Shown: piece after piece, positions 1-39,400 of the stretch | Layout: each line of letters begins with the position of its first letter | How positions within the stretch are numbered: position 1 is the stretch's first letter | Position numbers and translations under genes: made by a program | Assembly: GCA_965637545.1 (NCBI GenBank) | Contig: OZ281497.1 | Span: 19,964,001 to 20,028,000 of the forward strand | Length of the DNA stretch: 64,000 nucleotides | Origin: Phallusia mammillata | Lineage: Eukaryota | Direction of reading: 5' to 3' | The notes under the pieces: generated by a model | Database searches by the model: none | Told to the model about the DNA's origin: nothing | What the model saw: the letters and a program-made list of their open reading frames with translations, nothing else

Positions 1-312
1 ACTACTAAATTTCAGGCCAGACGGTTCTAAATAACTAAACCGTCATGTCGTAATATTATATGTATCAACTAAGAGGGTCTTAACTATAGTATTATGATAT
101 TATAGTCTTTACAAACTTTACAAACTGTGAATACTGTAATAAAATCACAGTACGCCAGGCCCATTGGCGTCATACCGAATCAGCCGGTCACCAAGCATTC
201 ACCACACTATGAATACTGTAATAAAAAATCGAAATGCATGGAAAAAAACTTTTGGCTCATAAAACACATAAAATACATAAAATACAATTTTAATCAGTGT
301 AGCGGCCCAAAC

Positions 313-17618: not shown

Positions 17619-18255
17619 TTTGACATCGACAATATACAAGAATTATAAAGATACGGTTACAAGCAACACACTACTTCTAAAATCAAATAGAACCTGAAAA
17701 AAGGAAACTGTAAAAAATTGCTGGTGATATTTGATGATTAAGTAACATAACAAACAAATTTCAATTGAATTATAGTGATTACAGCCGTGTAACCAAAACG
17801 ATCCTACAAAATTGCAGGGTAAAATCATAAACTAACAAATACAATTTAAAAATAATTTATGCAACCTTATATCATATTAACTGTGGTATGTCTTAAAAAC
17901 ATGATTAGCTTTTTAAATTATTGATAACACTGCTACATAATTAGGCAAATTTGACCTATCGCAGGAAGCAACATTTAATACATTAAATCTTTATCTCTAG
18001 GATTTAACATGTTAGAAACAAATATGGTACCCCATAGGTTCTAAAATCAAAATGTTGGGTTTACAATCATGCATCTGTAAATATACATTCAAAAGATTTG
18101 CTTACACAAGCTGTGATTCCCTAATATCTTGATTTTTTTGTTTTTTAACAAACACATAAAAATAGCTACTTTAGATTGGTGATTATACATTGAGCAACAA
18201 AGCACAATGAGTGTCAAAAGTCACCAATTCAGGAATGAAAGAAGGCAATCTAAAC

Positions 18256-18750: not shown

Positions 18751-21487
18751 GTCTAAACAAAGCACACTGGAAGCAAAATTGAAACACAAGCAGTAGCAAA
18801 GGAGCAGCTGGATTTTTTTGATTTTTACAGGAGACATAAGGTCTCGATTTTTTCTCTGTTTCTTGAGGATCTTAAACAAAATATATTAAAAAAAAATGTA
18901 CAACAAGTCATAATCATTGACATTTCTGTGAACATTGACTGGTGGTCTAATCTAAACTAAAGCCAATGTTTATAAATTTTGTTGCAGAAAAAGGTAATTA
19001 ACACAAAGTAGTAATTACTACTAGGGACTTTGGTATCATGCATATTCAACACCACTTTCCAAACTACTGGCAGCTTTTTTCAAAGGGGAACTGTGGTGGA
19101 AAAAAATCTAAGAAATGTAAACAAACAAACCAACCTTAAATTAATATGGTTGGTCCAAAAAAAAATTACTGGAAAAACTTTGCATAGACAACACTAAGAA
19201 ATGCTTATCTGATATGCTACACTAAATACTGTAAGTAATAAAAAAGGAAAACAATCAACACAATAAAACTTCGTTGGACGTTTATCGACAAAACGTCTTA
19301 ACTAATTTAAAATACTTTATCTGCACTTCTGCATAGTACAAACATCGATCTTATTGCTCGACAACATGTTAAGAAGTTAAAGGAAACTTCCTAAAGACTG
19401 CAGCTCACAAAATCCACAAAACAAACATAAGAGACGCCCACTGTCCACTTCAAACCATTTCAAGAATTTAAATGACTCTCAGAAGAAAACTATTTTAAAA
19501 TCCTCTACCAGAGAATATTTAGAAAAAATATAAACAACTTTTGAGCATAATTATTGATTATCACGACATAAAAAAATAATACTAAATTTTTATGCAATTA
19601 ATTTAAATACCTATTTGTTCTAATTTTAAAAGATAACGATTTCATACACCAAAAAACACTCCACTAGTTTGGATTATCTGAAAAGAACGTTTGGTCCAAA
19701 AGGGGAATTACCCCATAAGCCTTTCGCAGTTCACAAAATATGCTGGTGAAAGTTTGTTCGTCTGGAAACAAAGACAATTGTCTCATTTTAGTGAAACTAC
19801 TGTCAGACAAAAACAAAACTCATCATGAGAATTTGCGCATGTTCCGCTTTGTTTTCATATAAAATCGTCTTGCGTCTGACCTGGGCTGCTGGACAAAAAT
19901 ATAGGCTATCATTGGCGCAACAATAACCTGTGACTTCCAACTTGCATGAAATCTTTGTAGGCTACCATGAGCACTTTGTTGTTTGTTCGAAAATCCGTTT
20001 TAATACTGAAAGTAGACGAAGCCAGCAGAAAACGTCAACAGTCAACATTTCCGACAGCGAACAATAGGAGAGTCGTAAATTTACGAAAACACAGTTTACA
20101 CAAAGACTGGACAAGTTCACTTGACAAAAACTTGGGACATCGAACCATTGGAAGTAAGAAAAGTGACAAAAATCCATTGTTTTGCACCGACGACATAAGC
20201 CTTTAGTAGGCTATATGTTTGTTAGGGATGAAATCATTTAAAAATCACACATAGAATGTTGGTTTACCATTAAAATATAATCGGAACTTATTGAATACCA
20301 AGATAGTGTTTTAAAAATTAAAAAGGCACCGTGTATGGAGTTGTCTTTTTCCAAGTGTCGGCTATTGCATGAAAACATAGTTAACCAGCTTATTTGCATA
20401 AAACAACGGGCACAAAGCAAGACAACGAAGAGCATAGAACAAACACAAAGAAGACAACACGACAAAAGTACAAGAAAGAATTCGCAGCAAATCGCGCAAA
20501 TGTTTGGTGATTTTGAACATAGCGATTTAATCTGTAACATAAAATCACCGTAAAAAGACACGTTTATTTAGGCGACAAAGGTTTAAACTTCTTCCAGATC
20601 TAACCGTGCGCCATGCTTGGACCATGTGCCGTAGAAAAACTCAATTTGTTTGAAAATTATGTAGAAGCGCAACGAAAAACAGAAAATGTTCCTATTGTAT
20701 GGGTGAAAATGTCAATTGACTTAATAAAGTAAAAGGTTGTTTAGGAAGACAACCCAGAAACGACGTTTTTGATTGCGAAACCCGTTGAAGTGCCACAGTG
20801 CAGGCCATGATGAGTTTAAAAGTGAAAAATTACTTGTACAAAATTGCAGTAACGTGCACATTACAATGGAATAAGTGACCTCAAGTCGCGCCAAAGGCTG
20901 TCAGTTCATTTTCAACTCAAAATAAACCCCTGGTACGGATCAACGTGCAAATTCTGAGATGAACATAGAGGAGTAAGAAAAGATCATAACATTAGCCGTT
21001 GCTTAACAAAAATAAAACCAGGTAACTTAGAGGATCGTTTTCAAATGGTATGCGTTTGAGCATAGCTTGCAGACCTATACTAGAAACGGCAAAAGTTTTT
21101 TTAATAGCGCTATTCGACCTATACTGACCTACGAAACATCGAGCGCACAACACTCATGTGCAGAAGAATTCAACTAAAAAAGGGTCCGACAAAGTGCAGC
21201 GCATCGTAACGTGCATTAAACTGCACAGACACAAAAAGCATTTGCCAAGAAAATGCTCCGTAGCGAACCCTAGCGGCTAAAAGAGATGAACAGGATGCAT
21301 TCAAAATAAATTTGACATAAATCAGGGCGCCCACGTTGCAATTTCGGCATGTAGCAACACGAAACGTTGTAAACAAATGCTTTTGACGCGCAAACAAAAC
21401 AGGCGGCGACGCAAAAAAAGAAACATTAACAAAGCACATGTATAGTATAGTTATTGAATTTCATTGGCATTACGAAAAGTTAATGCA

Positions 21488-24400
21488 TCAGTGCGACCCC
21501 GAGAACGACGGCCCGGCTGCGAGAGTAATTGACGGTTGCTCGTTTATTTCATCCAACGATTCAACGACGGCTTTGCAGTAGAAGCACTCTTTGCTGGTCA
21601 TCATTTGTTGTTTAATGCACGTTCTGCAGCGAAGAGCATAAATTACAGTTTTTTCTTTGAAGATATTTTAGAAAACTTTACCCCAAAGGCAGCATTATTT
21701 CAACGCCACTTCCGCTTCCAATAAGGTTTCAAATAATTGTTTGTTGAGTTAGGCTATACACAAATAAAGCAAACCGGGCGTGAAGGATAAAACGTATATG
21801 AAAAGCGTTTCTATAAATTACAGAATCTTTCGTTAATTAAAAAAATCGGAAATAGTAGTTCATGTCCATATTAGATTTACAAAAAATGCGATTGTCAATG
21901 ATCATGTTGCCTGTTGGATATCTAATTGCGAACACTTACAAAAAGGTAGAAGTTCATAAAACTACTGTTGTGCTGTAAGACAGACCCACTTTAAAAACCA
22001 CTGTTCTAAAAAGTTAAAATGTATCTATAAGCACTCACTTGCAGGATGTGTGTTGACAGGGATTAAACACAACTGAGACAAGGTTAGCGTAGCAGATCGT
22101 ACACAGGTTGTCTTCGTCCATTGGCTCCTGCAAATCACGGGACGTTTAAGGAAGCCGCATCCATTACAGGTAAATGCATCCCAGCAACTAAAGCCTAGTC
22201 TATAAGTACTGTTGGTCGCGGTACACGCCACGTTAAATAAGTTTGCTGTTTTGGGCAACAGGAAATTCATAGTGCAACATTATCGAGTGAAGGGTACCAC
22301 ATCAAATGTGTATTTGTAATAGTTTTGAGTGTACAGACAAGTTATTTTCGCGCTAGTATGACTTTATCGTAACAATGGCCTGTGGTGCCAGATTGCGCCA
22401 AATCACTTACAAACCAACGGAGAAGAAAGTGCTCAGAAAATGTAAAAACAAAACAAATGTTTGACATTCAAAGCAAAGGGGTAATGAGTAAAGGTTAGTT
22501 GGTTGGTAAACATAGTTAAAAGCCAACTTACCTCAACGGTGGTCACTGCGTTCTTTTTCTCTCGGCGTAAAAAGCGTATGGCGTCACGGAGCAAGTTGAT
22601 TTCGTCATCCATCACTTCTTCGTCTGAAACAATGCATTTTCACGTTAAAACAGTAAGTGCTATTTGCACACGGAATAATATCTTTGTTAAGTTACAAAAA
22701 TATACTTTATTAAAAGTTAACAAACAAGACGAGCTTATTGAGAGCGAGACACTTAAACACGGTCTTTGTTCTATGGGTTAGTGGTTTATGCTCTGATGAT
22801 TCGGAATATAGGTAACTGCAGTTATAAATTGCGTGTTCAAAGCAGTTCACCACTACGTTAAATGTTGTAAGACGGGCCTTTTCGGTTGGTATTCCGGGTT
22901 CGAGTTTCAATAAAATTTGGGCCTGTCTTCACACTGGGAGTCATTTTACCTATTAGCACCAAGTTTCTGGCCTAATTCCAGCTTTGATTAAAAACCTGGT
23001 TTGGGTGGCGTAAGGGGTTTGTACTTTAGGGTTTGGGCCGGACTCGGGCAACATTTTCAGGCCGGCTTACACCTCTGGTTTGAAGGCTGATATTGCGTTT
23101 GTTACAACCTTCCTTTCTCACTGCTTGCTTTATGTTGTTATAATTAGCTTCAGCACAAACTTGAGTTTGTTGTGCAGTTGTGTGTTTAGTTTTTTTAACA
23201 AATCATTATTTACTTACATTCTTGTAGGGAGACAAATTTCTTTTCTTTTGATCTTGTGTAAGGGATGGTGACTCCTCTTGGCACCACGCAACTGTCATCC
23301 TTCTCTTCCTCCTGCATGTTGAGAAGGAAACCGACAGATTCCATGCTAAAGCTGGCATCAGCCAGAAGCTTTTTCACGGTACGATCAGCCCTGGTAAAAA
23401 ATACAAGTTTAGTGCACAAGGTTTCAGTGTTGTTGGACTTTCAATTTCAAACGGCTACTCTAGTTTGTGTTGTCGTGACCAAAAAGAGTAAACAAATCAA
23501 GTGAAATTGTACAGTGCAACAATCCATTGTTAACCAAAGAGTTTTTATAGAACGATCTGCTGACATGTTGTTTCGTGGGGCAAACCAAAGTAAGCACTAA
23601 AACAACAATAATAGGAGTCTAATATTTTACCTAAATCGTAACAAATACAAAATTTCACACTATAGACCTAAACCGTGCGAAAATTAAATATTATGGAAAA
23701 GGCACGCCGTCTACTTTTCAAACTTCTATCGAAAACAACAGCTAAACGACTGCATGGGCAATAAATAATTAAATTCGGACATGAAACGCGACGCATATAA
23801 TTCCCCGGCTCAGATCATTTGTAACAAAAAATGAACTCTGAAAAAAAAAGTATTTTTAGACCTAAAATATAAAGAGTTATTATTGTTTGAAGCAAAAAAG
23901 TTCAAAATTCAGTATTATTATTAAAAGATACAAGTCATAGGAATTGGAAAACACTAGAAGCTTCTGGAAGCATTCTACATGAACGTAACCAAACTACCGT
24001 CAACACCTGCTGCGAGAGTTACTTATTTCAGTGTGATGTTACACTTCATGACTTCAAAAAGTCAGCGCGTGCTGGGGATCACGCAAAACTAAAAGTCACC
24101 GACCAAGCATCTCAAAATGCCGCAAAACAAATAACCTCAATCGAGAAACGCACAAAGTACTAAGGCTGGATATTTTAAGCTGCATCAAGACTTCTTTACG
24201 TGTGGAACATTGTACGGCTGGCCGGTGTGAGCAGCATGGATTTCCGTGTTAATTGGGCTTATGATTGGCGTTGTTACCACTTATTTTGACGTGCTAGGCA
24301 TGCAGGCATTAAAATTTGATGGAGGGACGTTTCTCATGCATCGCGCAGACGGTTCGCATTTTTGTGAGATAAAGCTAGGGTAGTTGACTGGCTTCGTATG

Positions 24401-27400
24401 TATTGGAATTGCAGCAGATATAGGTATGTCGCGGTGTACATAAAAAACGCAAACTTGAAAAGCAGTTTGTTTTCTTTTTTGTGGCTGATTTTGGTAGACG
24501 TTAAAATGGCTGCAGGGTAGTGTGTGGTTGGAAATAAAATCTGAAGTCTCAACCGCACTTGACTGCACCGTATTCGCATAATGCATACATTACAGGGTGC
24601 CTAGTTTCAAAGATAACAGTCACGAAGGCGCAAGGCAGTTATTAAAACTATAGATTTGCGTAAAACTGTGCCATGTATGTAGTTTGTTCAATATACAGGC
24701 AAATAACCAAATTACGTTTAAGCATGTAATTCACATAGTTTCATGGTAGTAATTTGTATACGACCACAGATTTAGCACTGTCGGTATTTGTACAAAAAGT
24801 TGTTTTTACATCTGCTATATAACTGTGTCAGACATTATCGGGTAGCTTTGACATGCAAGCAATCAACGAAAGGTGACAGGTGTGATGGATAGTGGAAGAA
24901 CTAAAGCAGGTAGCATAACTGTGAAGTCGACAAGCGCCAATAAATATTCATGGCAAATTGATCTGCGATGTCAGATAACTCGATGGTTCGTTACATTTTG
25001 ATCAGTTCTGATATTTGGCAGGCAGTGAGTCAAGGGGAAATGTGATACTCTATGATTTTGGCCAACTGGGTCGAAAATCAGACTATTTTTACGAGCAAAT
25101 ACACCAGTAGGCTTGTTTGTGCCCCCAAGAGGGTAGTTACCGTGACAGCACGTGATTTGAGCCTAATTATTGCGCGGTGGTACAGAAAATCTATAAAGAT
25201 AAGGGCCAATTGATGTTTTGCAGCGCTGCGAGGTTAACAAGCTAATTTACTTTCCACAGATGGAACTATAGGTAACTTACTATACGCTGCATGAGATGCA
25301 CATCTGATTGGATTAAGCACAGACAGAGTTAAAGAGCAAATGTCGACCACAATTGAAGCACCTCTTCGATTGTAAGTATAATGTGGATTTTTTTTACTTC
25401 TCATTGGCAGAATTTAAAACTAATTTATAACCAACGGCACTTTGGCATTATGCATCGAAGTGTAGCAAATAATAACCCAAATTACTCTTTTTGAAATGGC
25501 AAGTAAAAGGCAGAATTCAAACAGAAGTATATCAGGCCAATACAGAATTACTTCAAACTATTGATTTTTGCGACTTCCTCAGACGGCTGTGAAATAGAAT
25601 GTTTTGACTCTGTTACGTAAGACCTAAGCTGAGATATGAATTATGCCAGCTCGTCACTAATAAGTTATTTCACTGAACAGGGCCAATCTCACCGCAAACA
25701 CCAACTCATCATCACAAGTTCAAGGATTTCATCCTGGGTTCACGACTCTCATATCATGTGGCCTGCTCGTGGTCATTCTCGTGATTTACATGTGGTTCGA
25801 GCCCAAACTCACGAAGTGCTTCGCCAAAAAGGAACGTGTACAGTTCGACCCCGAACCTTCAACACATGAAAACCGAACAGTCGATCCGAAAAACCGAATG
25901 CGATACGTTTGGACAAGTCCAAGATGCGCGGAGCCGGCTTCGGCGCACAACAAACACGAGTTATGGACGCCTGATCGGGCATTAGTACGAGAAGGCGGTG
26001 CGGTGGTAAGAGTAAACGATTACACTTCGATAGTGGAGTCCCGCCACACAACCCCGCTTGTGTTAGTGACACCACCGGTTGGAGGAAATTAGTTCTGCAA
26101 ATTCCGACAACGCAGATATACGCAACGCCTGACGTTTGAACTTTTGAACAATAACAGCTCTTGTTTTTTTATGTATTTCTGTCGCAGTGAAGCCGAGGTA
26201 TTGTGTAAATGCTCAAAATAAACGTACTTTAGAGTGTTAGGAAACTGGGGTAAAAGCATGTTAAAAACTGTGCAAAGCGTCAGGTTGTTGATTGTAACGC
26301 TTGGCTTGGCGTAAAGTGAACCGTAAACGCAATTACACGGATCACTCGCTACACGAAGCGTATTCAGGAAATCACGAGATCAAAGATCGAAAGTTTTGCT
26401 CAAGGCAAAGTTGCTTGTTCGATACGATGATTCAGAAAAACTTGTACACAGAGAAAATAATTTCAAAGATTTAGGCATACACTGCCGAAAGTAGATAGTA
26501 ATATGTATAAGTAACCAAACACTCATGAAAGTAGCAACTAACATGCAGTTTGTTCGATTAGCAGTTACAGAACACTGCCTTGACAGTTTTACAGCCGAAA
26601 AAAGGCCATAAACCGTGTTCTCTTTCCATCAAGAGTTGATTGAAAATTTTGAACTTGGAATCTAATTGTTATCAGACTCCAGTGCACTGATCCAACAAAA
26701 CGAATTCATCACCAGTCACCGATGAAACCAACAACTTGAACACAAAAAAATATTAATGCGATAGAAAATGCAATACGGGCCAGAGTCTTACACAACGACA
26801 ATATTGCTACCTTCAACTGCATTTACGGTGTTTGACTAATTCAATTAGCCACGCGCAAGTGATTCTTGTACATAATTTATTACGACAATGTGAAAACAGC
26901 AATGTAGTAAGCTTGTTAATAATTTATGAGAATTAGAGTTCACCGGAAATACAGGCATAGTTGGGCTGGTTTCAATTAAATTACAATAACAAGTGCTGCA
27001 TTTCTTTCAGGTTAGCATGTGGGGTGAGAATTTCGGGCTAATTTTTGTTTCAAACATTTTGTACAGTTAAAAGACAATGAAACAGTAGGTGTTAACAGCT
27101 GTTTTTTTACTATGAACTTTGAAACTCTATATAGAAGTCAAATTGTAAACAATTGAAGACCCATGTATTTTGCAATTATTTGTAATACAGCGACCTTATA
27201 ACAAATTAAAGCAAACAGCAAAGAAAGATACAAATCAGCAAACTTGAGATGTTACGGACGATAAGAAATAACCAGGTTAAGTAGGAGATTAAGAAAGGGC
27301 ACAAAGAGTGCGAACTGCCATTGAAGCGCTGACCAAGAATCCTAACACAAATCCAACACCCCTTGACGGTTGAGGAAACGCACCAATGAAAGCGATCGAA

Positions 27401-30400
27401 TGCCAAACACGTGACCAGAAAAATATCTGCACATAAAAACCGATGTAAGGTGTCCAAAAGAGTGAAATACATACATTAGTTTGTAAAATTTTTATTCAAT
27501 GATTTTCATACACTGGCATTTTTTGCTTTATGATTTATGGCATGGAAACCCAGGCTTGAAAAAAGCTCAAACCTTTGCACGCAATTTTATGGACAATTAC
27601 ACAATGCTTAGCCTACAGACAAATACAAACCTTAAAATGCCAAAGTGCAGTAGACGCATCAGGTCCAGTAGAAAGATACAAAAGTCCCAGCAGAACGAAG
27701 GGAACAACATTTTCCAGATCGTTTAAATGCGCGCGCCTTGCTCGCTCAACATCATCGTTTGGCCGAAGCAATTCCTTTTGTTTTTCCTTGTCGTTTGGCG
27801 CCACCACGCGGGCATCCTCGGGTGAGGATAAGGACGAAGTTTTGACGCGAAAATAGCTGGTGACCAGAGACATTGCCATTGTTTTGCATACAACGAGCGT
27901 GGCGTATCGCACAAAGCCCGCAAAAGCTTCGTTGTCAAGTGTAAAGAAAGACATACTACTGACTTAAGTGATGCTATGCAATGCTAACTCTGCAATATTA
28001 AAGCACAAAATATTGAAAAAGTAGATCTCCTTGAAAGCAGAAAATTAGAACTCGGATTCTGTCGCCTCAAAAGTGCCTTCGGCGGACAAGAGTCCAGTAT
28101 TTATAGCCTAAACCTAAGACAAGTCCACGTTAGCATGACAACGCAAAAAAATGCGTGTCAATAATTGCGCCATTCGTTGAAATTTTTGCTTCAGCCCAAT
28201 AACCTCAACAGGTTTCATCATGCACAAACTTCAAACAATTGCAAGAGTTTCACATCACGTTAAAGATAGCAGAAAATACAAGACAAACAGAACAGCTTAC
28301 CACGTCGCTTACTACACGGTTCGGCAAACAACCAATCCGCAAGGTTTTCTCGTGAAGAGAGCTTACCTATATTGACACAAATGAATCTACCGGCGCAAAA
28401 GCCGACACGGTGAATGATCTACAACGGGAGCTGTTTGGTCACGTGAAACACGCACCCACCGTGACTATGCATATTTGTGAGCTGATGCCCTCCACGCGTC
28501 AGTGATGACGAAACGAGAGCTCTTGTCATTTTGGATGACGCAACCCGATACAATTTTCGTAAAGTTGGTTGAAATGTTCGGTAATTACGCAATGTATGGA
28601 AATTCTCAAATCAAATTCACCTTTTTATTTTTAAGTGTAATCTTCTTGCAGACAATTTTGACAAGAATTAACTCCCCCACAAAAACAAGCACTTTTAAAA
28701 GACGCGCCAATTTTATTTGTCAACCAAGCATCGGCAACGAAAAGCCAGAAATGTTTACAGTAACAACAGAAGGAAGCGTAGCATCACGGTCGGCGGCGTT
28801 TGTTAAGAATTCATGTCGCTTTGACCAGATTAATACAACGCCATAAGAATGTGAAGCAGCATGGACACGTTGATACCAAAGCCGGAAGCAAAGCCGAGCA
28901 ATCGAATGGGTTGCGGCAAAGCATAGATGTACGCAATTGTGTGAATGACTCGAGCGCCAAGGAAGATCTGCAAACAACAGACAATATATTACCCAACACA
29001 AAATAACTATGAATAACTTACAAAAAACACCTTCCTACTGGATGTACATAAGTACGATTTTTAACCTTTAGTGAACTTACGACTTATATGCTTTGTGTTG
29101 CATCAAATATTTAACAGTTTAAACCAATTTCAACGAGCATTTATTAGTTTGAATGTTACGAAGTACTGACAGTGCCTTAGGTTTCGTAGTTGGCAGTCAT
29201 GTGAAAGAATATGATGCCTTTGCCTACCTGGAAATGGAAGACAGCGCCTGAAAACTCCGGACCGGTTGCAACATACAACAATGCAATCAGAACAAAAGGT
29301 AAAACGTTCTCCAAGTCGTTAAGATGGCTTCTTCGTATCTACACAAAGCAAAGTGCATTAGAGTTTGGGGTACTAAAAATTCAAACAGAATGGACAAGGA
29401 CCTGACCCACTTACTCTTTCAATGACTGCATTGGATTGAAGCATCACTTTGTGTTTTTCCTTGCTTTTCTCCATAAATACTGCATCTTCAGGAGTTGGAA
29501 TTGACTTGAGTGTAACACGATAGTACACAGTGATGATAGACATCAATACGGTTTTGGCAAGCGCCAAGGCACTATACCACACATACTCCTTAAACAACTT
29601 GTTTTCCATCGAAAGTGTCGACATCTTGGTTTTGACAGTCAAGAAGGTTGCCTATACCCACTGCAGAGATAATGCTTTTAATAGCTTGCGACAATTGACT
29701 GATTTAATTACCCGTCTGGCCCTTAGCTACGTAGTTAAACTACAATCAATTTGGTGTCAGCGTTCTCTTAACTTTTGAATGAGGGAAGACTATTGGCAAC
29801 CCGAATATATTACACTTACGTCTGTTCTGACGTTTATAACATGACACGCTTTTACTTTTTGCAAAATAATTCTGATTGCAGTTTTTTTCTACTTTTTAAA
29901 AACCACGCCAAATTCAGTACTTGAATTTCGACATTACGCACAATCTATGGCCTACTTTCATAAATTCACATCACAAATCATGGAGTCATGATTTCCATCA
30001 ACTCAATAACGCCAAAATCCTAGTCACGAATATCTAATTTCAACGCAGTTTGGACTTTGCTATGTGCAAGGCTGTTTCTGTACAAGCGTCTCACAGCACA
30101 AAGCCTCGATACCCGATACGGTCTGTCAATCTCGAGTCATTTCCCGTAGAAATCGCTGAATGTAGGCTGGAGAGGCCTTAAGCTGCGTTGTAGTGTTTAA
30201 GGCATAATGACCAAGCAGTTTTCTGATTGGTTGTAGGAAAAAAAGCTGTATTAAGTGGCTACTGCCAACTGAAGTCGGACAAGAGTTTTTATGCCGACGC
30301 ATTGAAAGTTTCATACCAAGACTAAAATGCAACAAACTGAACAATATCAGACCCTCCAACAGACAGCATGGTCATTGACCCTCACTGTTACTGTAACAGA

Positions 30401-33400
30401 ATCAGTCAATGCATTTACATGGAATAAACATATATTTCGCCTAATTGACATCTTTAATTCCTTATTCAAATAGAACAAAACTTTAGAAAAAGTATTACAC
30501 ATGCATATGTAGGAGAGTTATACTTGTATTTACACCATATACAGCATCAATTAAAACCAACAAAGTACTTGCACATTGGTCTATTTAGAGAACAGAAGTC
30601 ATAATACAAAATGCCATGTAGCAGCATACACCATAGCCAGCCATAAAAGTAATTGACCTTGCCGGTTGTGGAACAGCATTCAGATACACAATGGTGTGCA
30701 AGATACGACTCACTGAAAAGACCTGAAACAAATTTTACATTAATTCACTACTGAAAGCACAACTTGTACACATACAACACACCCGAAAAAGCAGCAATGC
30801 AGTTCCATAACTAGGGTTGGTTCCAATGTACAGAAGTGCCATTAATAGAAAAACATATATGTTTTCCATATCGTTCAGATGACATCGACGAACCTAAAGC
30901 ATATTAGGTTAATTAAATCGAGATAATTTATGAATCAATTATATGTTTGTAGGTACTAACGCAAGTTGCAGCAAATACTTCAAATAAATTGAAGTTAAGT
31001 TATAAACATGTCTTTTCGGTGAAGAGGTCAAATAAGACATAAGTTTTAGTAAGTAGTTTAACTTATCGGTGTGTGCGTAACCTAATTGTTTCAAGTCAAC
31101 TTAACATCTCAGCACAATTATGTTGCATGTAATGCTTTGGTGCAATTTCTAATGCATTTACAACAAAGTTCTCACCCTCTCCACGTTTTCATTTGCCACC
31201 AGCGCTTCTTTCCTTGATTCACGGTCCTTATTCAAAACGTCCTCCGACGACACAAACGAATTGTTGGCAAATCTTTTTGTCGTCGTATACAGTGCTAATG
31301 CCATCATCTTGACCAACACAATACACCCATGCAACATTAACGCTGCAAAAGTGTCATTTTCCAACGAGTACGGACTGCCAGCCATTCTGTATGATTATAC
31401 TCCACTTTCTGATCGACCACAATACAAAACCGCGAGGTCAAACCAAACGTACAGCGCTGGTAGGTATATCTCAGCTGAAAAAAATGCCCCAGGCTTATAA
31501 GTTACGTCACTCCGGCATGTTCCGGTAAAAAACGAGATTTGAAGCATAACGTTTTATGTCTCACGAACTAAGTCACCGACATAAGACTCGCCCCAACATT
31601 CCATTCAAACACGGGAAATTTGCCAAAAAAGAGTGTTGGCAAACAAACGAAAAGTTTTGTTTCAAAATTGTTTGTCAATAATATTTTTCTATGAAAAAGA
31701 GCATCAAAAGCCTACGACACCCGGTATTCCCAGGCGGTCACCCATCCAAGTACTGACCGGGCCCGACGTTGCTTAACTTCCCAGATCGGACGAGATGGGG
31801 TGTTCTCAACGTGGTATGGTCGTAGGCGATTGCTCGCGCGCAATGATGCTTTTTGTAGGGCAAACAATCTTATCTAGTCTCACACAATTTGATCACCGAA
31901 AATTCGTTTATTTGCGGAAAAACAAACGTCGATGCATGACCATTTTAGAACTGAAATTATATACATTTTTGAATATAATCCTAACTTCTACGTTGCAATT
32001 AAGCATAGACTGGTCCCGAAATGTTTTATTGTAAAAGGGATCTCAGAATCGAAAATGCCATGTAACCACACACTCCAAATCCGGCCATGAAACACAGACC
32101 TCTTGCCGGTTGTGGAACTGCATTAACGTACACTATGGTGTGCAAGATACGACTCACAGTGAAGATCTGAAACATAATTGTTGTTAAACAGTAACGATAG
32201 TTTATTGTTTATTTCAAATAGCAACACAAGTTCAATGCGAAATAGTCCATTATAGTCAAACAGCTACTGTATAATGTCTTGAAGAACATGTTGCAAGTAG
32301 AAATCTTACTGAGTTTGAGTTAAACATTCACTTAAACCACACGGTAAACTCTTATCTGTGGTTAAGTTTACCAGCAGCCAAGCAACGCACCCGGAAAAGA
32401 AGCAATGCAGTTTCATAGGCAGGGTTGGTTCCAATGTACAGAAGTGACATTAACACAAAAAGATAAACGTTTTCCATATCATTCAGGTGACATCGCCGTA
32501 CCTAAAACAAATAAGACTTATCGAATCGAGATCATAACTGTTAAGTCACTGCAAACCACACCATTTTAAACCAAAAAGTAACCCTTGGGAGAGTGTTTTT
32601 GTAGAATAAGGTAGAATATTATCTTTAGTGTGATCTAGCAACTAACTAAGCAAATCGGTGAAATGCTAATCAGACATTATAATTTAGAAGTTTTTGTCAA
32701 ATTACCTTTAACCCAAACAAACCGTTCATGCTACGTTTTTGCTGTAACTTATACTTTACATTAACATCTTACCCTTTCCACATTCTCATTTGGCACGAGT
32801 GCTCGTTTTCGTACTTCAGGATCGGAAGAAATGCCTGCAACATCCTCTGACGACAAAAACGTTTTGCTCCCTATTCTTTTTACAGTCGTTAATAAGACCA
32901 CTGCCATCATCTTGACCAATACAATGCACCCGTACAGCAAAAATGCCGAGAAAGTGTCATTTTCTAACGAGTAAGGACTACCTGCCATCTTGTACGCTTG
33001 CTTTCACGTTCTGAATGAGTATTCGACGAAACCGCTTAGTTAAACCGAACGTTTGCTACTTGGTTACTTATTAACACCAGCTGAAAGCTCGGCTTGAGTA
33101 TGACTAGGTGTTTTGCCGGCGTGTTCCGGTTCAAATAGTGTAGCCTACAGCGGGCGAAACCTCACAAAGGAACCGTGAAGCACAACATAGGCTACACCTG
33201 ACTCATCCACGCGAGACGCCATTCCATGTGAGGAAAATTCACGGAAAAAAGAAGCGGCAGAACAGAACAGGTCGTACCTTTCACGCTACCTGTTTAGACA
33301 ACTTCCCATTATCCATGTACCTTTGTTTAGAATTCCACCAATTGTGTTGTAAAGACGATGGGCATGGATTGGGCCACTGGAGCAAAATGTCCAGCTCGCC

Positions 33401-36400
33401 CTCGATTTGAACGCGAAATGTACAGTTTGTTTAAATGTGCGCATTACCACGTCAGAATTCGGTTGCAGGTAGAGTTATTCAAATGCCAATTGACTGAAAC
33501 CGATTCACTGGTTCAAAAGGTCAAACAGTGGTGTTTAATAATGCAAATACCACTTTCAAAACTTTTGTGGAAATGCTTTGCTGGGTCTGAGCTTGTAAAT
33601 CAGTCAAGGTAAACAAAAAACAACGGTTCTGTTTCCAAAAGTAAAAGCCTACGACACCCGGTATTCCCAGGCGGTCACCCATCCAAGTACTGACCGGGCC
33701 CGACGTTGCTTAACTTCCCAGATCGGACGAGATGGGGTGTTCTCAACGTGGTATGGTCGTAGGCAACTGCTCGCGCGCAATTACGCTTTATATGGGGCGA
33801 GATTTACCAACGGCACTACTAATATAATGAAAAAACAGAAACAGTGCTTTCACAAACGAATTTAGACTGGAGTAGTTTTATTTGTTGAACGAATAAACAA
33901 TTATGTGTTCCCATTGATTGAATTGTAATCTTGTGCAACTTTAATGAAGACAAGTAATGTTCTAATGTTGCAATTGGACGCAATTTCACGACATTTTCGT
34001 TCAAAGTAGAGTTTTGAAAATTGAAAATGCCATGTAGCCGCACACCCCGAAACCGGCAATAAAGCACAGACCCCTTGCTGGTTGTGGAACTGCATTAACA
34101 TAGACTACGGTGTGCAAAATACGGCTCACAGTGAAGATCTGAAAAAAACACATATATTTATTGCACTTTTTCACCGCACAAAAGACAAGTGCATTTTATA
34201 CCACATTACATACCCTGAAAAGCAGCAATGCAGTCGCATAGGTAGGGTTTGTACCGATGTACAGGATTGACATAAGCACGAAAAGGTAAACGTTCTCCAT
34301 ATCGTTACGGTGACATCGGCGCACCTAAGAAGCGTTGAAAACATAGAGTTAGAAATAAAAACCAATAAATACCTCTCAGAGCCTTAACCTACCCTCTCAA
34401 CATTCTCATTAGGCACCAAAGCGCGTTTCCGTTTCTCAGGGTCTTTTACATCTTCTGATGAGATAACTGCCTTGTTCTCTTTTAATTGTTGTTAAAGGAA
34501 CGACTACCATCATCTTGACCAACACAATGCAACAATACAGCAGGAACGCTTTGAAGGTGTCATTTTCTAGCGAGTACGGACTGCCTTCCATCTTGCCTGC
34601 TGAGTTTGCTTTGCCTAAACTTAATGTAAATGTGCAGAAACTACCCAACGCTACGCTTAGTACACTAGCTCGACATTTAGTCACTGATTAATATCCATCG
34701 CAACTAGTAGGTGGAAGGTTGTTTCTCACAGACAGTTTTCACTGATCTAGCTTTTTCTGCGCTCGAGGTTACCAAATCAGAACACAGTACAATGGCACAG
34801 TAAACTGAAATCAGCCCATACATAAACAGATCTGTGCAAAAAATAATGCACGCTATTTTATCTACGACTGTTTTAAATCCATGGACAACCTAGTCTCTAT
34901 TAGATATCTGTTATAAGTTGTTAGGTAGCCTACAAACTTAGATACATACATACCAACTACAGGTAAAGCAGGACTTACCCGTTCGACGTTCTCGTTGGGC
35001 AAAAATGCCTTTCTGCGTTCCTCAGGGTCTGGGCCAATACGATACAAATCCTCTTTGGAACTGACCGACTTGTTTTTAAAACGCTTTATAGTAGTGAGTG
35101 TTGTCATCAACATGGTCTTGACCAGTAATATGGCACCGTAGAGCAGAAAGGCGGCAAAAGTTTCGTTTTCTAAACTATAAGGTTTCATGGCGCTTGTCCT
35201 ACTTGCAACTAACTGAACACGCTATTAATGTGAGAATGTTTTGGGTTCCTCACTTACACATGTTCAATCGTCCAAAGGGCATTTTTTTCGTGTGCAAATA
35301 TTGACATTTACGCTGCCTTGCTGGGTGAAAACGCCATTCTTACATCATTTTTAAGCAGCTCCAAGCACGTGACAGGAACATAAAATACGTTCACAAGATC
35401 CAAAAACTTGTCCAACAAAATAGACCGTGAGGCAGTTTGAAAAAAAGCAAAAGCCTACGACACCCGGTATTCCCAGGCGGTCACCCATCCAAGTACTGAC
35501 CGGGCCCGACGTTGCTTAACTTCCCAGATCGGACGAGATGGGGTGTTCTCAACGTGGTATGGTCGTAGGCGATTGCTCGCGCGTAATGACGCTTCTTATA
35601 GGGACGTAACAACGAGATATTGCATTTTAGGTTTCATACCCCTTTTGAATACTCTGTAGTCTGTACAAGTGCTACTGCCCACAATTAAAAAGGACAACAG
35701 AATGCGAAAGCAGGCCTAAAACATCTGCTTGAAACACCAAGCAGTCTTTTTAGTCAATATGTAAATGTAGACATAAAAGTGATCAATATTCTTTTGTTTC
35801 AATGCCTTTTGACAAAAGGTCAATGAGCCAATTTCACAAACGAACCAAACTCAGGACAAACAATTCAGACTAGGTTCTTTTGGTCACGACAACACAAAGT
35901 ATGGGTATCAAAGTAAAAATATTGGACCTGATCATAAAGACACTCACCACACTTTGTTTTCTTGCTTCACAAGCTTCAGAATAATCCCAGCTATGGACGT
36001 CATCAGTGGGTAATGCTGAACGCTGCTTAGTCCTGCAAGACATTAACCTCAGATAGTAAAATAGTTCAGTAACCTCCCACTGTTATTAATGTGGCAATGG
36101 CGTTCAATTTCTCATCAAATCTTAGCCTTGGTTACATTCACTTGATCCAGAGGTTTAAAATCAGGGAAAAGTATCTCAAAAACAGTAACTTTGACCCACC
36201 TTAAGTCCAAAATAGTTATACAGTTATACATTGTGACACTGAAAACAAGGCCTACAACATAGAACGTATATCTGTAGACTTTGTTTTTCAATAGTTTTTT
36301 TATGTTTTTTTATGAAAAGAAATGCATAGCGATGAATTTTATCGTCGAGGAGGGGTAAACCGAAACTAAAAAAGGTTAAAAGTTTTTATTACTGGTCAAC

Positions 36401-39400
36401 ATTACCTGGTTGCTTTCCAGAAACCACTTTGTCAAATAAGCTTCCTTTGTTTGTGACTCGGCTCAAAATTTGGTTCACGCACTGCGAAAGGAAAAATCAA
36501 GATATGATTACTTTATTTCCACTAGAATGTGTCCGAGTCGTCAGGTGCATTTTACGTGCATTACTGACATCTTTTAAACACTAAAAAAATCAGTGACATA
36601 AATCGCAGTTCAGTTTATAAGGTACACGTGTGATTTTCCTTTTGTCAAACGCATTTAGTTTTTTTCAGGATGGTGCTTTTCATCAGGCCTCTCTTATATC
36701 TGTCCTACATTATAACCCAATAGTAAAACAAGAATCTCTGGTGTTACGTATATGCAGTGCAGTTCTACAAAACTCATAACTGATGAAATATGGCAGGTGG
36801 AAGTATCCTGTTTAAGTTCAAGCCCCAACACACCCATTAACGATTATAGCAGCGGTTCTCAAACTGGGGTTCGCGGTCCTTTATGCCGTCGAGGGGTCCG
36901 TGAGGCAATTTTGGGGGGACTTCGAAAAGGCTGAAGTACTTATATAATCTTATTTGGCGTCAGTTTATGCCACTTGATCGGTTCAAATCAAAGTAAAATT
37001 GACAATAGACTGTCTCCATTGCCAAACAAAAGCATTTATTGCGTGACAATGACAATTCACAAAAAGGCAGTTGTTCTCGCACAATCGTAATGTGTTCGTC
37101 TTGTCTGTGATGTCACAGCCAGTCTATGGAGCATTGTTATGCGATTTTTTGCATAACTAGCTAAAATCCTGCAATTAACTTCCGTTTTTTTCTGAAATAC
37201 ACATTTAGGCGTAAGGACCGCGAGCCGTCGAAATAATGACAAAGGGACCGTTTTGAAAAAGATCTGAAAAAGTTGAGAACCACTGGATTATAGCAACGCC
37301 ATATTGAACAATTAAATCACCTGAATTAGACTTGTTGAAAGAATCTCTGAGTCGCCGTTGTTGGTCCAGTCCATGAAGACGTCAGGAGCAACAGCTAGAG
37401 TTAGTTCGAGTACTCGCAAGAGGGAAACAGAGAGCTCGAACAACATGTCAACAATGCGGAGTTGACGTAAGGCCTGTGCATCGAGTGAGGCCAACAATCC
37501 AGTCGCCCCTTTCCATCCACGCAAGTTTTGCTGGTGGACCTAATGCAAACAAAGTGGAAACTTAGAGTAGGTCATACGTTCTCAACCAGGGTATTTTTAA
37601 CACGCCTTGTTGACTATAACACCTTGGCAATTAGCACCTCCAACTTTGACAGGTTCTACAAAAAAGCATCTTTGTACATAAATCCGTAGGTTAAAAGTCA
37701 GTTAAAGTCGTTGATTGCGTTTGCTTGCGCCTCATACACCCATATAGCGCAAATGAACTTTTTTAGTCGGGTTCGGGCTTAACTTTGAATAAAATTGACT
37801 TGATTCCATCCGGACTTTACACTGGGCCAAATTTGCGTCGTGTTTTTGCATAGTAAATCTTAATCGCCGAATATTTTATGTAAAACTCCTGGTTTTGCTG
37901 TTTTCTGGTTAGTACTTTCAGGTCCCAACTTCAAACCCGCTTACAACTCTGTGAAATGTTATAACACCTGACAGTCAACGCAACAAAGCAATAAAGTAGA
38001 GGGTTTATCCGCATAGAGTTTGCACATATATTTTTCGAATAGAAGCAATAACAAAATATTTAGCAAAACATGTAATAAATGTCCTGATTGTAATGGAATA
38101 AAGGATTAGACTAAACAAGTGAAAAGCAAAAGCCTACGACACCCGGTATTCCCAGGCGGTCACCCATCCAAGTACTGACCGGGCCCGACGTTGCTTAACT
38201 TCCCAGATCGGACGAGATGGGGTGTTCTCAACGTGGTATGGTCGTAGGCAATTGCTCGCGTGCAATAACCTGTCTTATAGTGACGTTACAAACGCCTAGC
38301 AGCCCATAATAAAACTACATTCGTTTCGGTGGAATATTTTTGTCCATTTTTAACCCTTATGAGGTCAAATTAAGCTCTGTACAGTTACTACACACATTAA
38401 AACCTTTTTAGCCATACTTAGTGTGGTTTTAGCCATACGAAGCAAAATTTTAAAACGGAATATCTATTCTTTACATGCCACGTAGAAGAGGGCCGTATAG
38501 TTGTGTATGTAGTTTACAAAGTTGTTGTACCTCTTGTAATTGACCGATGAACTCGGAGAAACTCCAATGTAAATGTTCCAGTATACTGTGCACGAATTTC
38601 CCAGCTAAAGTTGGTTCAGTCATGAGAAGTTCACGAACACAGTCGAGCAGTTTGCGTGGCACGTATGGGTCTGTACAATGCAAAAGTATGTTTTAAGGCA
38701 ATGTTCCCTTACAAAATCCGTTTAATTGATTTGTGTATGTCAGGGGTGGCCAACCGGTCAAAGCCTAAGAGCCATATTTTTTATTGTGTTACCACAAAGA
38801 GCCACATTATACGCATAAGCAGATATGTTCAATGCCTTGTCCCTTCCTCACACACAGAGACATGTGCTTAGCCAGATCTATTCTAAATGTCGCCAACATA
38901 ATAACATAATAACGACACAATTTGACTTGTACAGACCACGGGCCAGTCATTTTCAACTATAAATGGTCAGTGCAAACACCGTCTCTCACACAAAACCCTC
39001 ATTTCAACGAATCCATCAAACAAAAACATATAAATTTAAATCCCCCTTTTTTTCTCATTCTATAAATAACGTGCGGTGAGATTCATTTCTGGTGAATTGC
39101 TAAAATCTTTTTTCACTGCCAATTTGAAGGCTAACTTGACAAAAATTGTTTATTTAAAAGATTTTCCCTGCTGAAAAAACTCTTGGTATTTTCATCTAAC
39201 GCGCATTGTGCGCCAAGTGCAAAGTGGCGAAACTAATTCATTGCGACGTCATTAATGCATTCACCACCAACAATCGTTCAATTCAAACCCAAGACAAACT
39301 GCCGATAAAATATAACGTTCGTCATAACCCGAAAAACAACGGATTGAAGCATTATTTACTTTGGAACACATTTGTTGCAAATATTGCTGTTGCTTTGTGT

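What the first reader, a model, noticed from the sequence alone, without database searches (positions are those of the whole stretch)
23391..35947. An entire multigene cluster nested in one 12.56-kb RNF123 intron
Exon 36032-35948 (..KQENKV-TG|) joins in phase 2 to exon 23390 (G-ADRTVKKLLADASF), and the RING exons follow at 22.1-21.5 kb, so RNF123 spans the interval. Inside are five same-strand MAPEG genes with their own GT-AG exons, three 5S genes and one antisense gene. Same-strand nested protein genes are uncommon, because the host pre-mRNA must skip about 15 strong internal exons and read through several internal poly(A) sites. This implies active exon-skipping or anti-termination control, or stress-dependent truncation of RNF123 before its RING domain.
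Basis: partly seen in the sequence, partly recalled or inferred. Interest (0 to 1): 0.8.

Follow-up and report, generated by a model that had tools for sequence, protein, structure and literature searches.

The report
Gene cluster nested in RNF123 intron
In a sea-squirt genome (Phallusia mammillata or a very close relative), one 12.6-kb intron of the ubiquitin-ligase gene RNF123 really does hold five detoxification-enzyme genes, three 5S rRNA genes and an antisense gene; RNA data show the host gene splicing cleanly across them, and the arrangement is shared by the other ascidians examined.

Summary
RNF123 lies on the minus strand (54456-21488; 35 coding exons). Its intron 31 (35947-23391; 12,557 nt, against at most 1,523 nt for the other 33) contains five intact same-strand MGST1-like (MAPEG) genes, three 5S rRNA genes and one spliced antisense gene. 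Spliced transcript contigs from three runs in two studies join 23390 to 35948 exactly. The public Phallusia mammillata RNF123 protein matches the spliced C-terminus exactly.

The nest is old. The homologous intron holds 3 MAPEG genes in Ciona, about 6 in Clavelina and at least 7 in Styela, each with an antisense gene. A mollusc RNF123 has no nested genes called. The 5S genes are seen only in the window.

Two new facts bear on it. A perfect 21-nt inverted repeat sits 50 nt after the donor and 73 nt before the acceptor, and is seen in none of the other 33 introns nor in the three other species. A Styela RefSeq model joins the same donor to the leader of the first nested MAPEG gene, predicting a RING-less protein.

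This is a well-supported new member of a known kind (nested genes). No earlier scan note records it on other DNA.

The parts
35948..36032 (-). RNF123 coding exon 31 (donor side of the nest intron); ends in phase 2 with TG, then GTGAGT
   Evidence: Sequence. 100% match to P. mammillata RNF123 residues 1127-1155. The RNA loose end matches 35949-35978.
23391..35947 (-). RNF123 intron 31 of 34; 12,557 nt; holds the whole nest
   Evidence: GT..AG boundaries with 0 mismatches to P0072 across the junction. RNA junction. The next largest intron is 1,523 nt.
23218..23390 (-). RNF123 coding exon 32 (acceptor side)
   Evidence: RNA contig piece 23218-23391 in X1, X2 and X3.
22532..22623 (-). RNF123 coding exon 33
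   Evidence: RNA joints and intron model.
22039..22127 (-). RNF123 coding exon 34, first half of the RING finger (CTICY...CQHTSC)
   Evidence: RNA contig and translation.
21488..21623 (-). RNF123 last coding exon, second half of the RING finger and the stop codon
   Evidence: The loose end before 22039 matches 21594-21623. Weak Pfam zf-C3HC4_3 hit, E 0.017, 15.4 bits, below the 27-bit cut-off. Orthologues carry PF13920.
34001..35188 (-). MGST1-like gene E, 152 aa; exons 35188-34979, 34324-34214, 34138-34001
   Evidence: Spliced model. E 2e-49 to Clavelina MGST1-like. Poly(A) hexamers 55 and 118 nt after the stop.
34439..34591 (-). Dead duplicate of an MGST first exon inside intron 1 of gene E
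   Evidence: The ORF begins MEGSPYSLENDTF but diverges. Models that use it give only a truncated 121-aa product.
32026..32988 (-). MGST1-like gene D, 155 aa, 3 exons
30585..31385 (-). MGST1-like gene C, 152 aa, 3 exons
28830..29624 (-). MGST1-like gene B, 152 aa, 3 exons
26863..27993 (-). MGST1-like gene A, 153 aa, 2 coding exons (CDS 27954-27631 and 27426-27289); the coordinates given are the extent of the mRNA contig
   Evidence: Pfam MAPEG, E 3.1e-13. RNA contigs with joint 27426/27631 in three runs. AATAAA at 26881.
35452..35570 (-). 5S rRNA gene
   Evidence: RF00001, 115.9 bits. TATA-like box upstream and TTTT after the gene.
33646..33764 (-). 5S rRNA gene
31709..31827 (-). 5S rRNA gene
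25251..26223 (+). Antisense two-exon gene (exons at least 25251-25371 and 25681-26223; CDS 25340-26092). It encodes a single-pass membrane protein of about 147 aa.
   Evidence: RNA contigs with a GT..AG joint 25371/25681 in three runs. Translation. No Pfam domain and no homologue found.
35878..35901 (-). 5' arm of the intron-end inverted repeat (perfect 21 nt at 35898-35878, which is +50 to +70 from the donor)
23461..23484 (-). 3' arm of the inverted repeat (perfect 21 nt at 23484-23464; it ends 73 nt before the acceptor)

Best explanation
This is a real and ancient nested-gene locus of ascidians. In or before the common ancestor of the sampled ascidian orders, a tandem array of MGST1-type microsomal glutathione transferase genes came to lie, in the sense orientation, in the fourth-from-last intron of RNF123. 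That intron also carries an antisense membrane-protein gene. The array has since expanded and contracted in place: 3 genes in Ciona, 5 here, about 6 in Clavelina and at least 7 in Styela. In the Phallusia lineage, solo 5S rRNA genes were added here and in three other RNF123 introns.

Shown: RNF123 mRNA joins 35948 to 23390 and keeps its RING exons. MGST-A and the antisense gene give their own spliced RNAs.

Inferred mechanism:
- The nested genes are autonomous units with their own 5' ends, introns and AATAAA or ATTAAA signals.
- When RNF123 is transcribed, polymerase II reads through them.
- The host donor normally pairs with the distant acceptor because first exons of nested genes offer no acceptor.
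- Any use of the nine internal acceptors puts a stop 0-41 codons downstream. The result is a RING-less, probably unstable product that assembled contigs would not show.
- In this species, a perfect 21-bp RNA helix between the two intron ends may additionally hold donor and acceptor together.

No dedicated anti-termination or stress switch is needed to explain the data, and none was seen.
For: - Junction in RNA from two studies.
- The C-terminus is identical to the public P. mammillata RNF123 protein CAB3265624.1 (P0072), with 0 mismatches across 30 of the 34 junction-anchored segments.
- The same intron position, after the codon split TG|G (AT|G in Ciona), hosts MAPEG genes on the same strand plus one antisense gene in Ciona (9,468 nt), Clavelina (about 17.4 kb) and Styela (27,547 nt).
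- Public gene models span the nest in all three species: 1321 aa in Ciona, 1323 aa in Clavelina, 1281 aa in Styela.
- A mollusc RNF123 has no nested genes called.
- All five MGST models are full length, with E 1e-44 to 1e-67 against annotated MGST1-like proteins.
- Both motif types (RRAHLNDLEN and RRCHxNDMEN) occur in Ciona, Clavelina and the window.
- Poly(A) hexamers follow every stop codon.
- Every hypothetical mis-splice ends in an early stop.
Against: - Expression was seen only for MGST-A and the antisense gene. Genes B to E were outside the one stretch that could be laid.
- Logan contigs cannot show rare chimeric or truncated forms, transcript starts or expression levels.
- Whether the nested genes have their own promoters is untested. 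All three MGST-A contigs stop at 27983-27993, at a strong AG acceptor (27990), which would also fit a spliced leader or an upstream exon.
- Physical contiguity of the 12.6 kb was not verified with DNA reads. It rests on synteny in three other species.
Confidence: 0.8

Rival explanations
1. RNA bridge. The 21-24 nt complementary boxes at +47 to +70 and -96 to -73 of intron 31 base-pair in the pre-mRNA. This loops out the 12.4-kb nest, brings donor and acceptor within about 120 nt, and so enforces skipping of nested exons. It might also rescue the host transcript from cleavage at nested poly(A) sites, as hypothesised for human long-range pairs.
For: - A perfect 21-nt complement, where shuffles reach at most 12.
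- Only two copies in the 64 kb even with 3 mismatches allowed; expected 0.01.
- It extends to 24 nt at 96% complementarity.
- The other 33 RNF123 introns have 4-10 nt of terminal complement.
- The best partner of the 5' arm anywhere in the intron is the 3' arm. The arm duplex is -33 kcal/mol.
- Precedent: looped-out exons are included less often, and a folding/splicing rescue from intronic polyadenylation has been proposed (PMC8052449).
Against: - Ciona, Clavelina and Styela keep the nest and splice across it without any such pair in the terminal 400 nt. A bridge is therefore not required.
- Random 40-mers of the intron find partners of -29.6 +/- 4.5 kcal/mol somewhere in the intron, the best at -44. 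The energy advantage is modest.
- There is no covariation test and no structure probing.
Confidence: 0.3
2. The inverted repeat is a transposon relic without a function. It would represent terminal inverted repeats of a DNA element (TA stands next to both arms), or two fragments of one repeat family, that happen to lie near the intron ends.
For: - Both arms are preceded on their outer side by TA, then one mismatch, then 21 identical bases.
- The repeat is lineage-specific.
- Perfect identity suggests recent origin rather than long selection.
Against: - The nest itself is far older than a perfect repeat could be, so the arms cannot mark its insertion.
- There are no further copies in the 64 kb, and no similarity beyond 24 nt.
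- The symmetric placement just inside both splice sites of the one giant intron is hard to get by chance.
Confidence: 0.3
3. Operon-like expression. The nested MGST mRNAs are cut out of the RNF123 primary transcript by spliced-leader trans-splicing at a leader acceptor and by polyadenylation, rather than coming from their own promoters.
For: - Ascidians are known to trans-splice many mRNAs and to have operons (established knowledge for Ciona; not tested here).
- Every MGST gene has a pyrimidine-rich CAG within 25-90 nt upstream of its ATG.
- All MGST-A contigs end at such an acceptor.
- In Styela the leader acceptor of the first nested MAPEG gene is used in cis by the RNF123 donor in a RefSeq model.
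Against: - No leader sequence was seen on any contig. The X1 contig is colinear with the genome through the acceptor.
- The spacers of hundreds of bases differ from the very short spacers typical of Ciona operons (from memory).
- 5S genes lie between the units.
Confidence: 0.15
4. Regulated truncation. Splicing or polyadenylation inside the nest is used on purpose, for example under xenobiotic stress, to make RING-less RNF123.
For: - Styela RefSeq isoform X2 (XP_039260455.1, 1131 aa) equals residues 1-1128 plus LAI and a stop. It uses a unique acceptor about 50 nt before the first nested MAPEG start codon.
- Intron retention or any mis-splice in the window also stops at or just after the W codon.
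Against: - That isoform is a computed model whose RNA support I could not inspect.
- No such form appears in the Phallusia contigs, and no condition-dependent data are available.
- Early stops ahead of further exon junctions would usually lead to mRNA decay.
Confidence: 0.1
5. Artefact. The block is misassembled into the intron, or the RING exons belong to another RNF123 copy.
For: DNA reads did not confirm contiguity. The DNA run gave only one short contig on the laid stretch.
Against: - RNA joins the flanking exons exactly.
- The same order (DAG1-like, RNF123 with MAPEG genes and an antisense gene inside, then an ankyrin/CCDC144-like gene) is seen in Clavelina, and the same nest in Ciona and Styela assemblies.
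Confidence: 0.02

Closest known systems
Vertebrate RNF123 / AMIGO3 host-nested pair
   Same: The host gene is the same, and a membrane-protein gene lies on the opposite strand inside RNF123. [quoted passage not shown]
   Different: Vertebrates have no MGST genes there (human MGST1 lies on another chromosome; from memory). The ascidian antisense product has no detectable LRR or Ig domain and no detectable homologue. Orthology to AMIGO is therefore unproven.
Mammalian host/nested gene pairs (genome-wide survey)
   Same: A complete gene lies inside a long intron of a host. Same and opposite orientation are described as broadly similar in frequency (PMC11694760).
   Different: Here five same-strand protein-coding genes plus polymerase III genes share a single intron. 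The arrangement is kept across the ascidian species sampled. In mammals, nested genes tend to lie in the most 5' introns, whereas this nest is in the fourth-last intron.
Long-range complementary regions (PCCRs) that loop out exons, and the ATE1 ultra-long-range structure
   Same: Complementary boxes lie far apart within one intron, close to the splice sites. The proposed effects are on exon skipping and on premature polyadenylation (PMC8052449; PMC7797038).
   Different: Those pairs are defined by conservation. This pair is perfect, lineage-specific and untested, and it would loop out whole genes rather than single exons.
MGST1 (MAPEG family) tandem clusters
   Same: Products are 152-155 aa with the ERxRRxHxNDxEN motif. 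Three-exon structure with phase-0 introns. Pfam MAPEG hit.
   Different: The genes are located inside another gene. Two motif subtypes are present (RRAH or RRSH in A and B; RRCH in C, D and E). Enzyme activity is untested.
Ciona operons resolved by spliced-leader trans-splicing
   Same: Same-strand genes that could be co-transcribed, with leader-type acceptors upstream of the start codons.
   Different: No leader and no polycistronic RNA were seen. The spacers are long, and the 'upstream gene' continues after the nested ones.

Membership tests
RNF123 / KPC1 E3 ligase | SPRY domain, RNF123-type TPR region and C-terminal RING in one colinear gene | tested here: met
   35 exons are colinear with P. 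mammillata RNF123 (P0072, which carries PF00622, PF25576 and PF13920) at 0-1 mismatches per junction segment for 33 of 34 junctions. The RING cysteines are present in the spliced translation.
Nested (intron-contained) gene | The whole nested gene lies between two exons that are joined in the host mRNA | tested here: met
   Host junction 35948/23390 in RNA contigs. All nested models lie within 23391-35947.
MAPEG / MGST1 | Significant match to the MAPEG profile and full-length similarity to MGST1 | tested here: met
   PF01124, E 3.1e-13, for gene A. All five genes align end to end with annotated MGST1-like proteins, E 1e-44 to 1e-67.
MAPEG / MGST1 | Glutathione transferase or peroxidase activity | not testable with these tools
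   Only the conserved ERxRRxHxNDxEN motif was seen.
5S rRNA (RF00001) | Score above the gathering threshold over the full model, plus a polymerase III terminator | tested here: met
   115.9 bits against 38, model positions 1-120. The coding sequence is identical in all six copies, followed by TTTT, with a conserved TATA-like box about 30 nt upstream.
AMIGO family (for the antisense gene) | LRR repeats, an Ig domain, a transmembrane segment and a conserved tail | tested here: not met
   No Pfam hit on the ORF or on upstream plus-strand ORFs. No homologue. Atlas hits are below a useful score. Only a short motif next to the transmembrane segment is shared with the Ciona and Clavelina counterparts at the same position.
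Spliced-leader operon | Polycistronic precursor and a leader on the downstream mRNAs | tested here: inconclusive
   No leader letters on the MGST-A contigs. Contigs are poor evidence for this, and no raw reads were available.
Functional long-range RNA structure | Complementarity beyond chance, plus conservation or covariation, or an experimental effect | tested here: inconclusive
   Complementarity far beyond chance. Absent from the three other species. No covariation data.

The most novel reading that the evidence does not exclude
In this species, a perfect 21-bp intramolecular RNA helix between the first 70 and the last 96 nucleotides of the intron loops out an entire 12.4-kb block of nine genes. 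This would let RNF123 splice across five expressed same-strand genes and their poly(A) sites. It would be a natural case of gene-scale 'loop-out' by long-range base pairing, and could be tested by compensatory mutation.
Probability: 0.3. Interest if true: 0.65.

Novelty: new member of a known kind. Interest (0 to 1): 0.45.

Why it matters
The locus gives a clean natural system for asking how a host gene is spliced and elongated across several active same-strand genes. The nest has been kept in one intron through the divergence of three ascidian orders while its gene number changed from 3 to at least 7. One lineage added polymerase III genes and a perfect intron-end complementary pair. Another has an annotated host-to-nested chimeric isoform.

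Ciona and Phallusia are electroporation-friendly models (from memory), so minigene tests of the bridge, of poly(A) read-through and of chimeric splicing should be practical.

For annotation, the locus explains why one Clavelina gene set splits RNF123 into three genes (449, 657 and 194 aa).

Tried and rejected
- **Exon search for orthologues.** The HMMER search of one 140-aa exon gave only 5 hits. It did lead, through cluster members, to full-length orthologues.
- **Solved structures.** The PDB has no RNF123 relative by sequence.
- **Antisense gene.** No homologues, no Pfam domain, and the Atlas search was uninformative. The AMIGO reading could not be supported.
- **5S genes in the other species.** None found in the Ciona, Clavelina or Styela loci.
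- **Styela protein P0076.** Not on record as a gene. Its cluster member P0082 worked.
- **A Logan MGST transcript of unknown species (L006-L008).** It has a 270-nt leader with no RNF123 part and no obvious spliced leader, so it is uninformative.
- **Duplex energies of 150-nt intron ends.** Not discriminating, because shuffles already reach about -45 kcal/mol.
- **Direct lay of both junction sides.** Not possible under the 6-kb limit. I did not submit a synthetic junction, because the tool asks for letters copied exactly from the window.
- **Literature.** No paper describing an ascidian RNF123/MGST nest was found.


Full report
**What the window is.** The window has 38-40% G+C and no N runs. 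Its minus strand carries an RNF123 gene. The exons match the public Phallusia mammillata RNF123 protein (CAB3265624.1 / A0A6F9DQA7, P0072, 1317 aa) at 96-100% per exon. Across 30 of 34 junction-anchored segments there are no mismatches. The window is therefore P. mammillata or something very close to it. The gene runs from 54456 to 21488, with 35 coding exons and 34 introns. A dystroglycan-like gene lies upstream (about 56.5-62 kb). A long ankyrin/coiled-coil gene lies downstream (about 0.3-17.6 kb). The same neighbours flank RNF123 in Clavelina lepadiformis.

**Checking the observation.** The exon at 36032-35948 ends with AAA GTG TG followed by GTGAGT. The exon at 23390 starts with G GCT GAT CGT after a pyrimidine tract and CAG. 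In Clavelina RNF123 (P0067) the two exons align to residues 1128-1156 and 1159-1221. In the Phallusia protein they align to 1127-1155 and 1156-1217. No coding exon is missing between them. The spliced reading frame continues ...KQENKVW|ADRTVKK... through the RING exons to a stop, and is identical to the C-terminus of P0072.

**Direct RNA evidence.** Eighteen runs of one coded organism hold parts of 21400-29400. Sixteen of them hold only 5-29% of the sampled words, as expected for RNA. I laid three of these (X1 and X2 from study P1, X3 from study P2) and one DNA run on 22000-27999.
- In all three RNA runs, one contig (3481, 3513 and 782 nt) carries 23218-23391 and 22531-23623's neighbour 22531-22623, joined with GT..AG ends on the minus strand. 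The X1 and X2 contigs also carry 22039-22126.
- Each contig then runs off the stretch at 23391 into 30 letters that occur once in the window, at + strand 35949-35978. The base at 23391/35948 is the same letter, so the join is exactly 23390|35948.
- On the other side, the loose end at 22039 matches 21594-21623, the last exon.
- Because these contigs lack the introns, they come from spliced RNA, although the run records only guess at 'RNA'.

**Contents of the intron (35947-23391; 12,557 nt).**
- *Five MGST1-like genes.* A small spliced-model search against Clavelina and Ciona MGST1-like proteins gives five complete minus-strand genes:
  - E: 35188-34001, 152 aa.
  - D: 32988-32026, 155 aa.
  - C: 31385-30585, 152 aa.
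  - B: 29624-28830, 152 aa.
  - A: 27954-27289, 153 aa. Gene A has lost the first intron.
- All introns are GT-AG and phase 0. Each product aligns end to end with annotated MGST1-like proteins at E 1e-44 to 1e-67. Gene A hits Pfam MAPEG at E 3.1e-13.
- C, D and E are 64-75% identical to each other and carry RRCHxNDMEN. A and B are 49% identical and carry RRAH or RRSH followed by LNDLEN.
- A dead duplicate first exon lies at 34591-34439.
- Each stop codon is followed by AATAAA or ATTAAA within 55-407 nt.
- *Three 5S rRNA genes* (31709, 33646, 35452; minus strand; 115.9 bits) alternate with genes C, D and E.
- *One plus-strand gene* is expressed and spliced (joint 25371/25681, GT..AG). It encodes a single-pass membrane protein of about 147 aa.
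- MGST-A is expressed and spliced in all three RNA runs. Its contigs run from 26863-26888 (next to AATAAA at 26881; 26774 in X3) to 27983-27993.

**Age of the arrangement.**
- *Clavelina lepadiformis.* One gene set splits RNF123 into three genes of 449, 657 and 194 aa. The 657-aa piece ends at the very W of the junction. The RefSeq model of 1323 aa joins them. Between the pieces, about 17.4 kb apart, lie about six MAPEG genes, some fragments and one antisense gene.
- *Ciona intestinalis.* The 1321-aa gene model spans three same-strand MAPEG genes and an antisense gene in the homologous 9,468-nt intron.
- *Styela clava.* The homologous intron is 27,547 nt, with at least seven MAPEG units and an antisense membrane-protein gene.
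- These species represent Phlebobranchia, Aplousobranchia and Stolidobranchia. The nest therefore predates their divergence.
- Both MGST motif types are present in Ciona, Clavelina and the window. The array was already at least two genes before phlebobranchs and aplousobranchs split.
- A mollusc RNF123 (Gigantopelta) has no called nested gene.
- None of the three ascidian loci has a 5S gene. The 5S genes are a Phallusia-lineage addition.
- In vertebrates, RNF123 hosts AMIGO3 on the opposite strand (PMC3933685). Another note of this scan reads the ascidian antisense gene as AMIGO-like. I found no LRR, Ig or any homologue. Only a short motif beside the transmembrane segment is shared among the ascidian counterparts at that position. 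That link stays open.

**How it probably works.** What is shown is that the host mRNA skips everything in the intron, and that at least two nested units give their own spliced RNAs. The rest is inference.
- The host donor can only mis-pair with acceptors. First exons have none, which leaves nine internal acceptors, plus possible leader acceptors.
- The host exon ends in phase 2 and all MGST introns are phase 0. Every such join gives a stop after 0-41 codons, and simple intron retention stops right after the W codon.
- Such products would lack the RING and would mostly be candidates for decay, so they could exist at low level without appearing in contigs.
- Same-orientation nesting is common enough in mammals (PMC11694760) that no special machinery has to be assumed. 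Suppression of intronic poly(A) sites by U1 (telescripting, as discussed in PMC8052449) is the generic candidate.

*First, a complementary pair at the intron ends.*
- The two ends of this intron carry a perfect 21-nt complementary pair: 35898-35878 (positions +50 to +70 after the donor) and 23484-23464 (ending 73 nt before the acceptor). It extends to 24 nt at 96%.
- Shuffled ends reach at most 12 nt. The 21-mer has only these two copies in 64 kb even with three mismatches allowed, against 0.01 expected.
- The other 33 RNF123 introns show 4-10 nt.
- The 3' arm is the best partner of the 5' arm anywhere in the intron. The arm duplex is -33 kcal/mol.
- Such a helix would reduce the effective donor-acceptor distance to about 120 nt and loop out the whole nest. 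This is the kind of effect described for human long-range pairs, where a rescue from intronic polyadenylation has also been proposed (PMC8052449).
- Against a necessary role, Ciona, Clavelina and Styela have no such pair.
- Random 40-mers of the intron also find partners of about -30 kcal/mol somewhere in the intron.
- TA stands next to both arms, which also fits a transposon relic.
- I rate a functional bridge at about 0.3.

*Second, a chimeric isoform annotated in Styela.*
- RefSeq isoform X2 (XP_039260455.1, 1131 aa) is identical in layout to the full protein up to the junction W, then ends with LAI and a stop.
- The only place in the 62-kb locus that encodes this after an AG is at L005 31187, about 50 nt upstream of the start codon of the first nested MAPEG gene. 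My estimate of the chance expectation is about 0.01.
- That model is therefore a host-to-nested chimeric transcript predicting a RING-less RNF123.
- In the window, every MGST gene has a pyrimidine-rich CAG 25-90 nt before its ATG, and the MGST-A contigs all end at such a site. This would fit leader acceptors, whether for a spliced leader or an upstream exon. No leader letters were seen.

**Limits.**
- Only one lay of 6 kb was allowed, and it used assembled contigs. Levels, starts, ends and rare isoforms are therefore unknown, and genes B to E and the 5S genes were not examined for expression.
- The DNA run gave only one short high-depth contig (22952-23162). Contiguity rests on cross-species synteny.

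**Verdict.** The nest is an ancient ascidian feature that already sits in public gene models, although no paper describing it was found. The claim that it implies a special control mechanism is not established, but a concrete and testable candidate (the intron-end helix) and an annotated chimeric isoform make it worth a bench test. It is a new member of a known kind, of moderate interest.

Noticed in passing
window 38131-38249, 41038-41156, 44549-44667 (minus strand): Three more 5S rRNA genes sit in RNF123 introns 28 (991 nt), 22 (only 332 nt) and 17 (576 nt). All six copies have an identical coding sequence, a conserved upstream stretch of about 40 nt with a TATA-like box, and a TTTT terminator. 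Their further flanks are unrelated. There are none in the Ciona, Clavelina or Styela loci.
   Followed up: partly
L005 31187 (Styela clava), protein P0083: RefSeq isoform X2 of Styela RNF123 joins the nest-intron donor to an acceptor about 50 nt upstream of the first nested MAPEG start codon. It ends after three codons without the RING.
   Followed up: partly
window 27983-27993 and upstream of each MGST ATG: The MGST-A RNA contigs of all three runs end at a strong AG acceptor (27990). Every nested MGST gene has a pyrimidine-rich CAG 25-90 nt before its ATG. These may be leader or trans-splice acceptors.
   Followed up: no
window 34439-34591 (minus strand): A decayed duplicate of an MGST first exon lies inside the first intron of gene E.
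   Followed up: partly
window 22952-23162: The only DNA-run contig laid on the stretch is a 211-nt piece with word depth of about 358, inside RNF123 intron 32. It is probably a high-copy repeat.
   Followed up: no
window 56490-61920 (minus strand) and 297-17642 (minus strand): A dystroglycan-like gene lies upstream of RNF123 and an ankyrin-repeat/coiled-coil (CCDC144/ANKRD26-like) gene lies downstream. Clavelina has the same order. DAG1-RNF123 linkage also exists on human 3p21 (from memory).
   Followed up: partly
L001/L002 (Clavelina GCA_961645235.1): In this assembly's gene set, RNF123 is split into three separate genes (449, 657 and 194 aa) at the nest intron and at one other place. The RefSeq set of the other assembly joins them.
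   Followed up: yes
window 26855, 27126, 27733: Single-base differences appear in MGST-A transcript contigs: G>A in X3 at 26855 and 27733, and T>G in X2 at 27126. They are probably alleles, and 27733 lies in coding exon 1.
   Followed up: no
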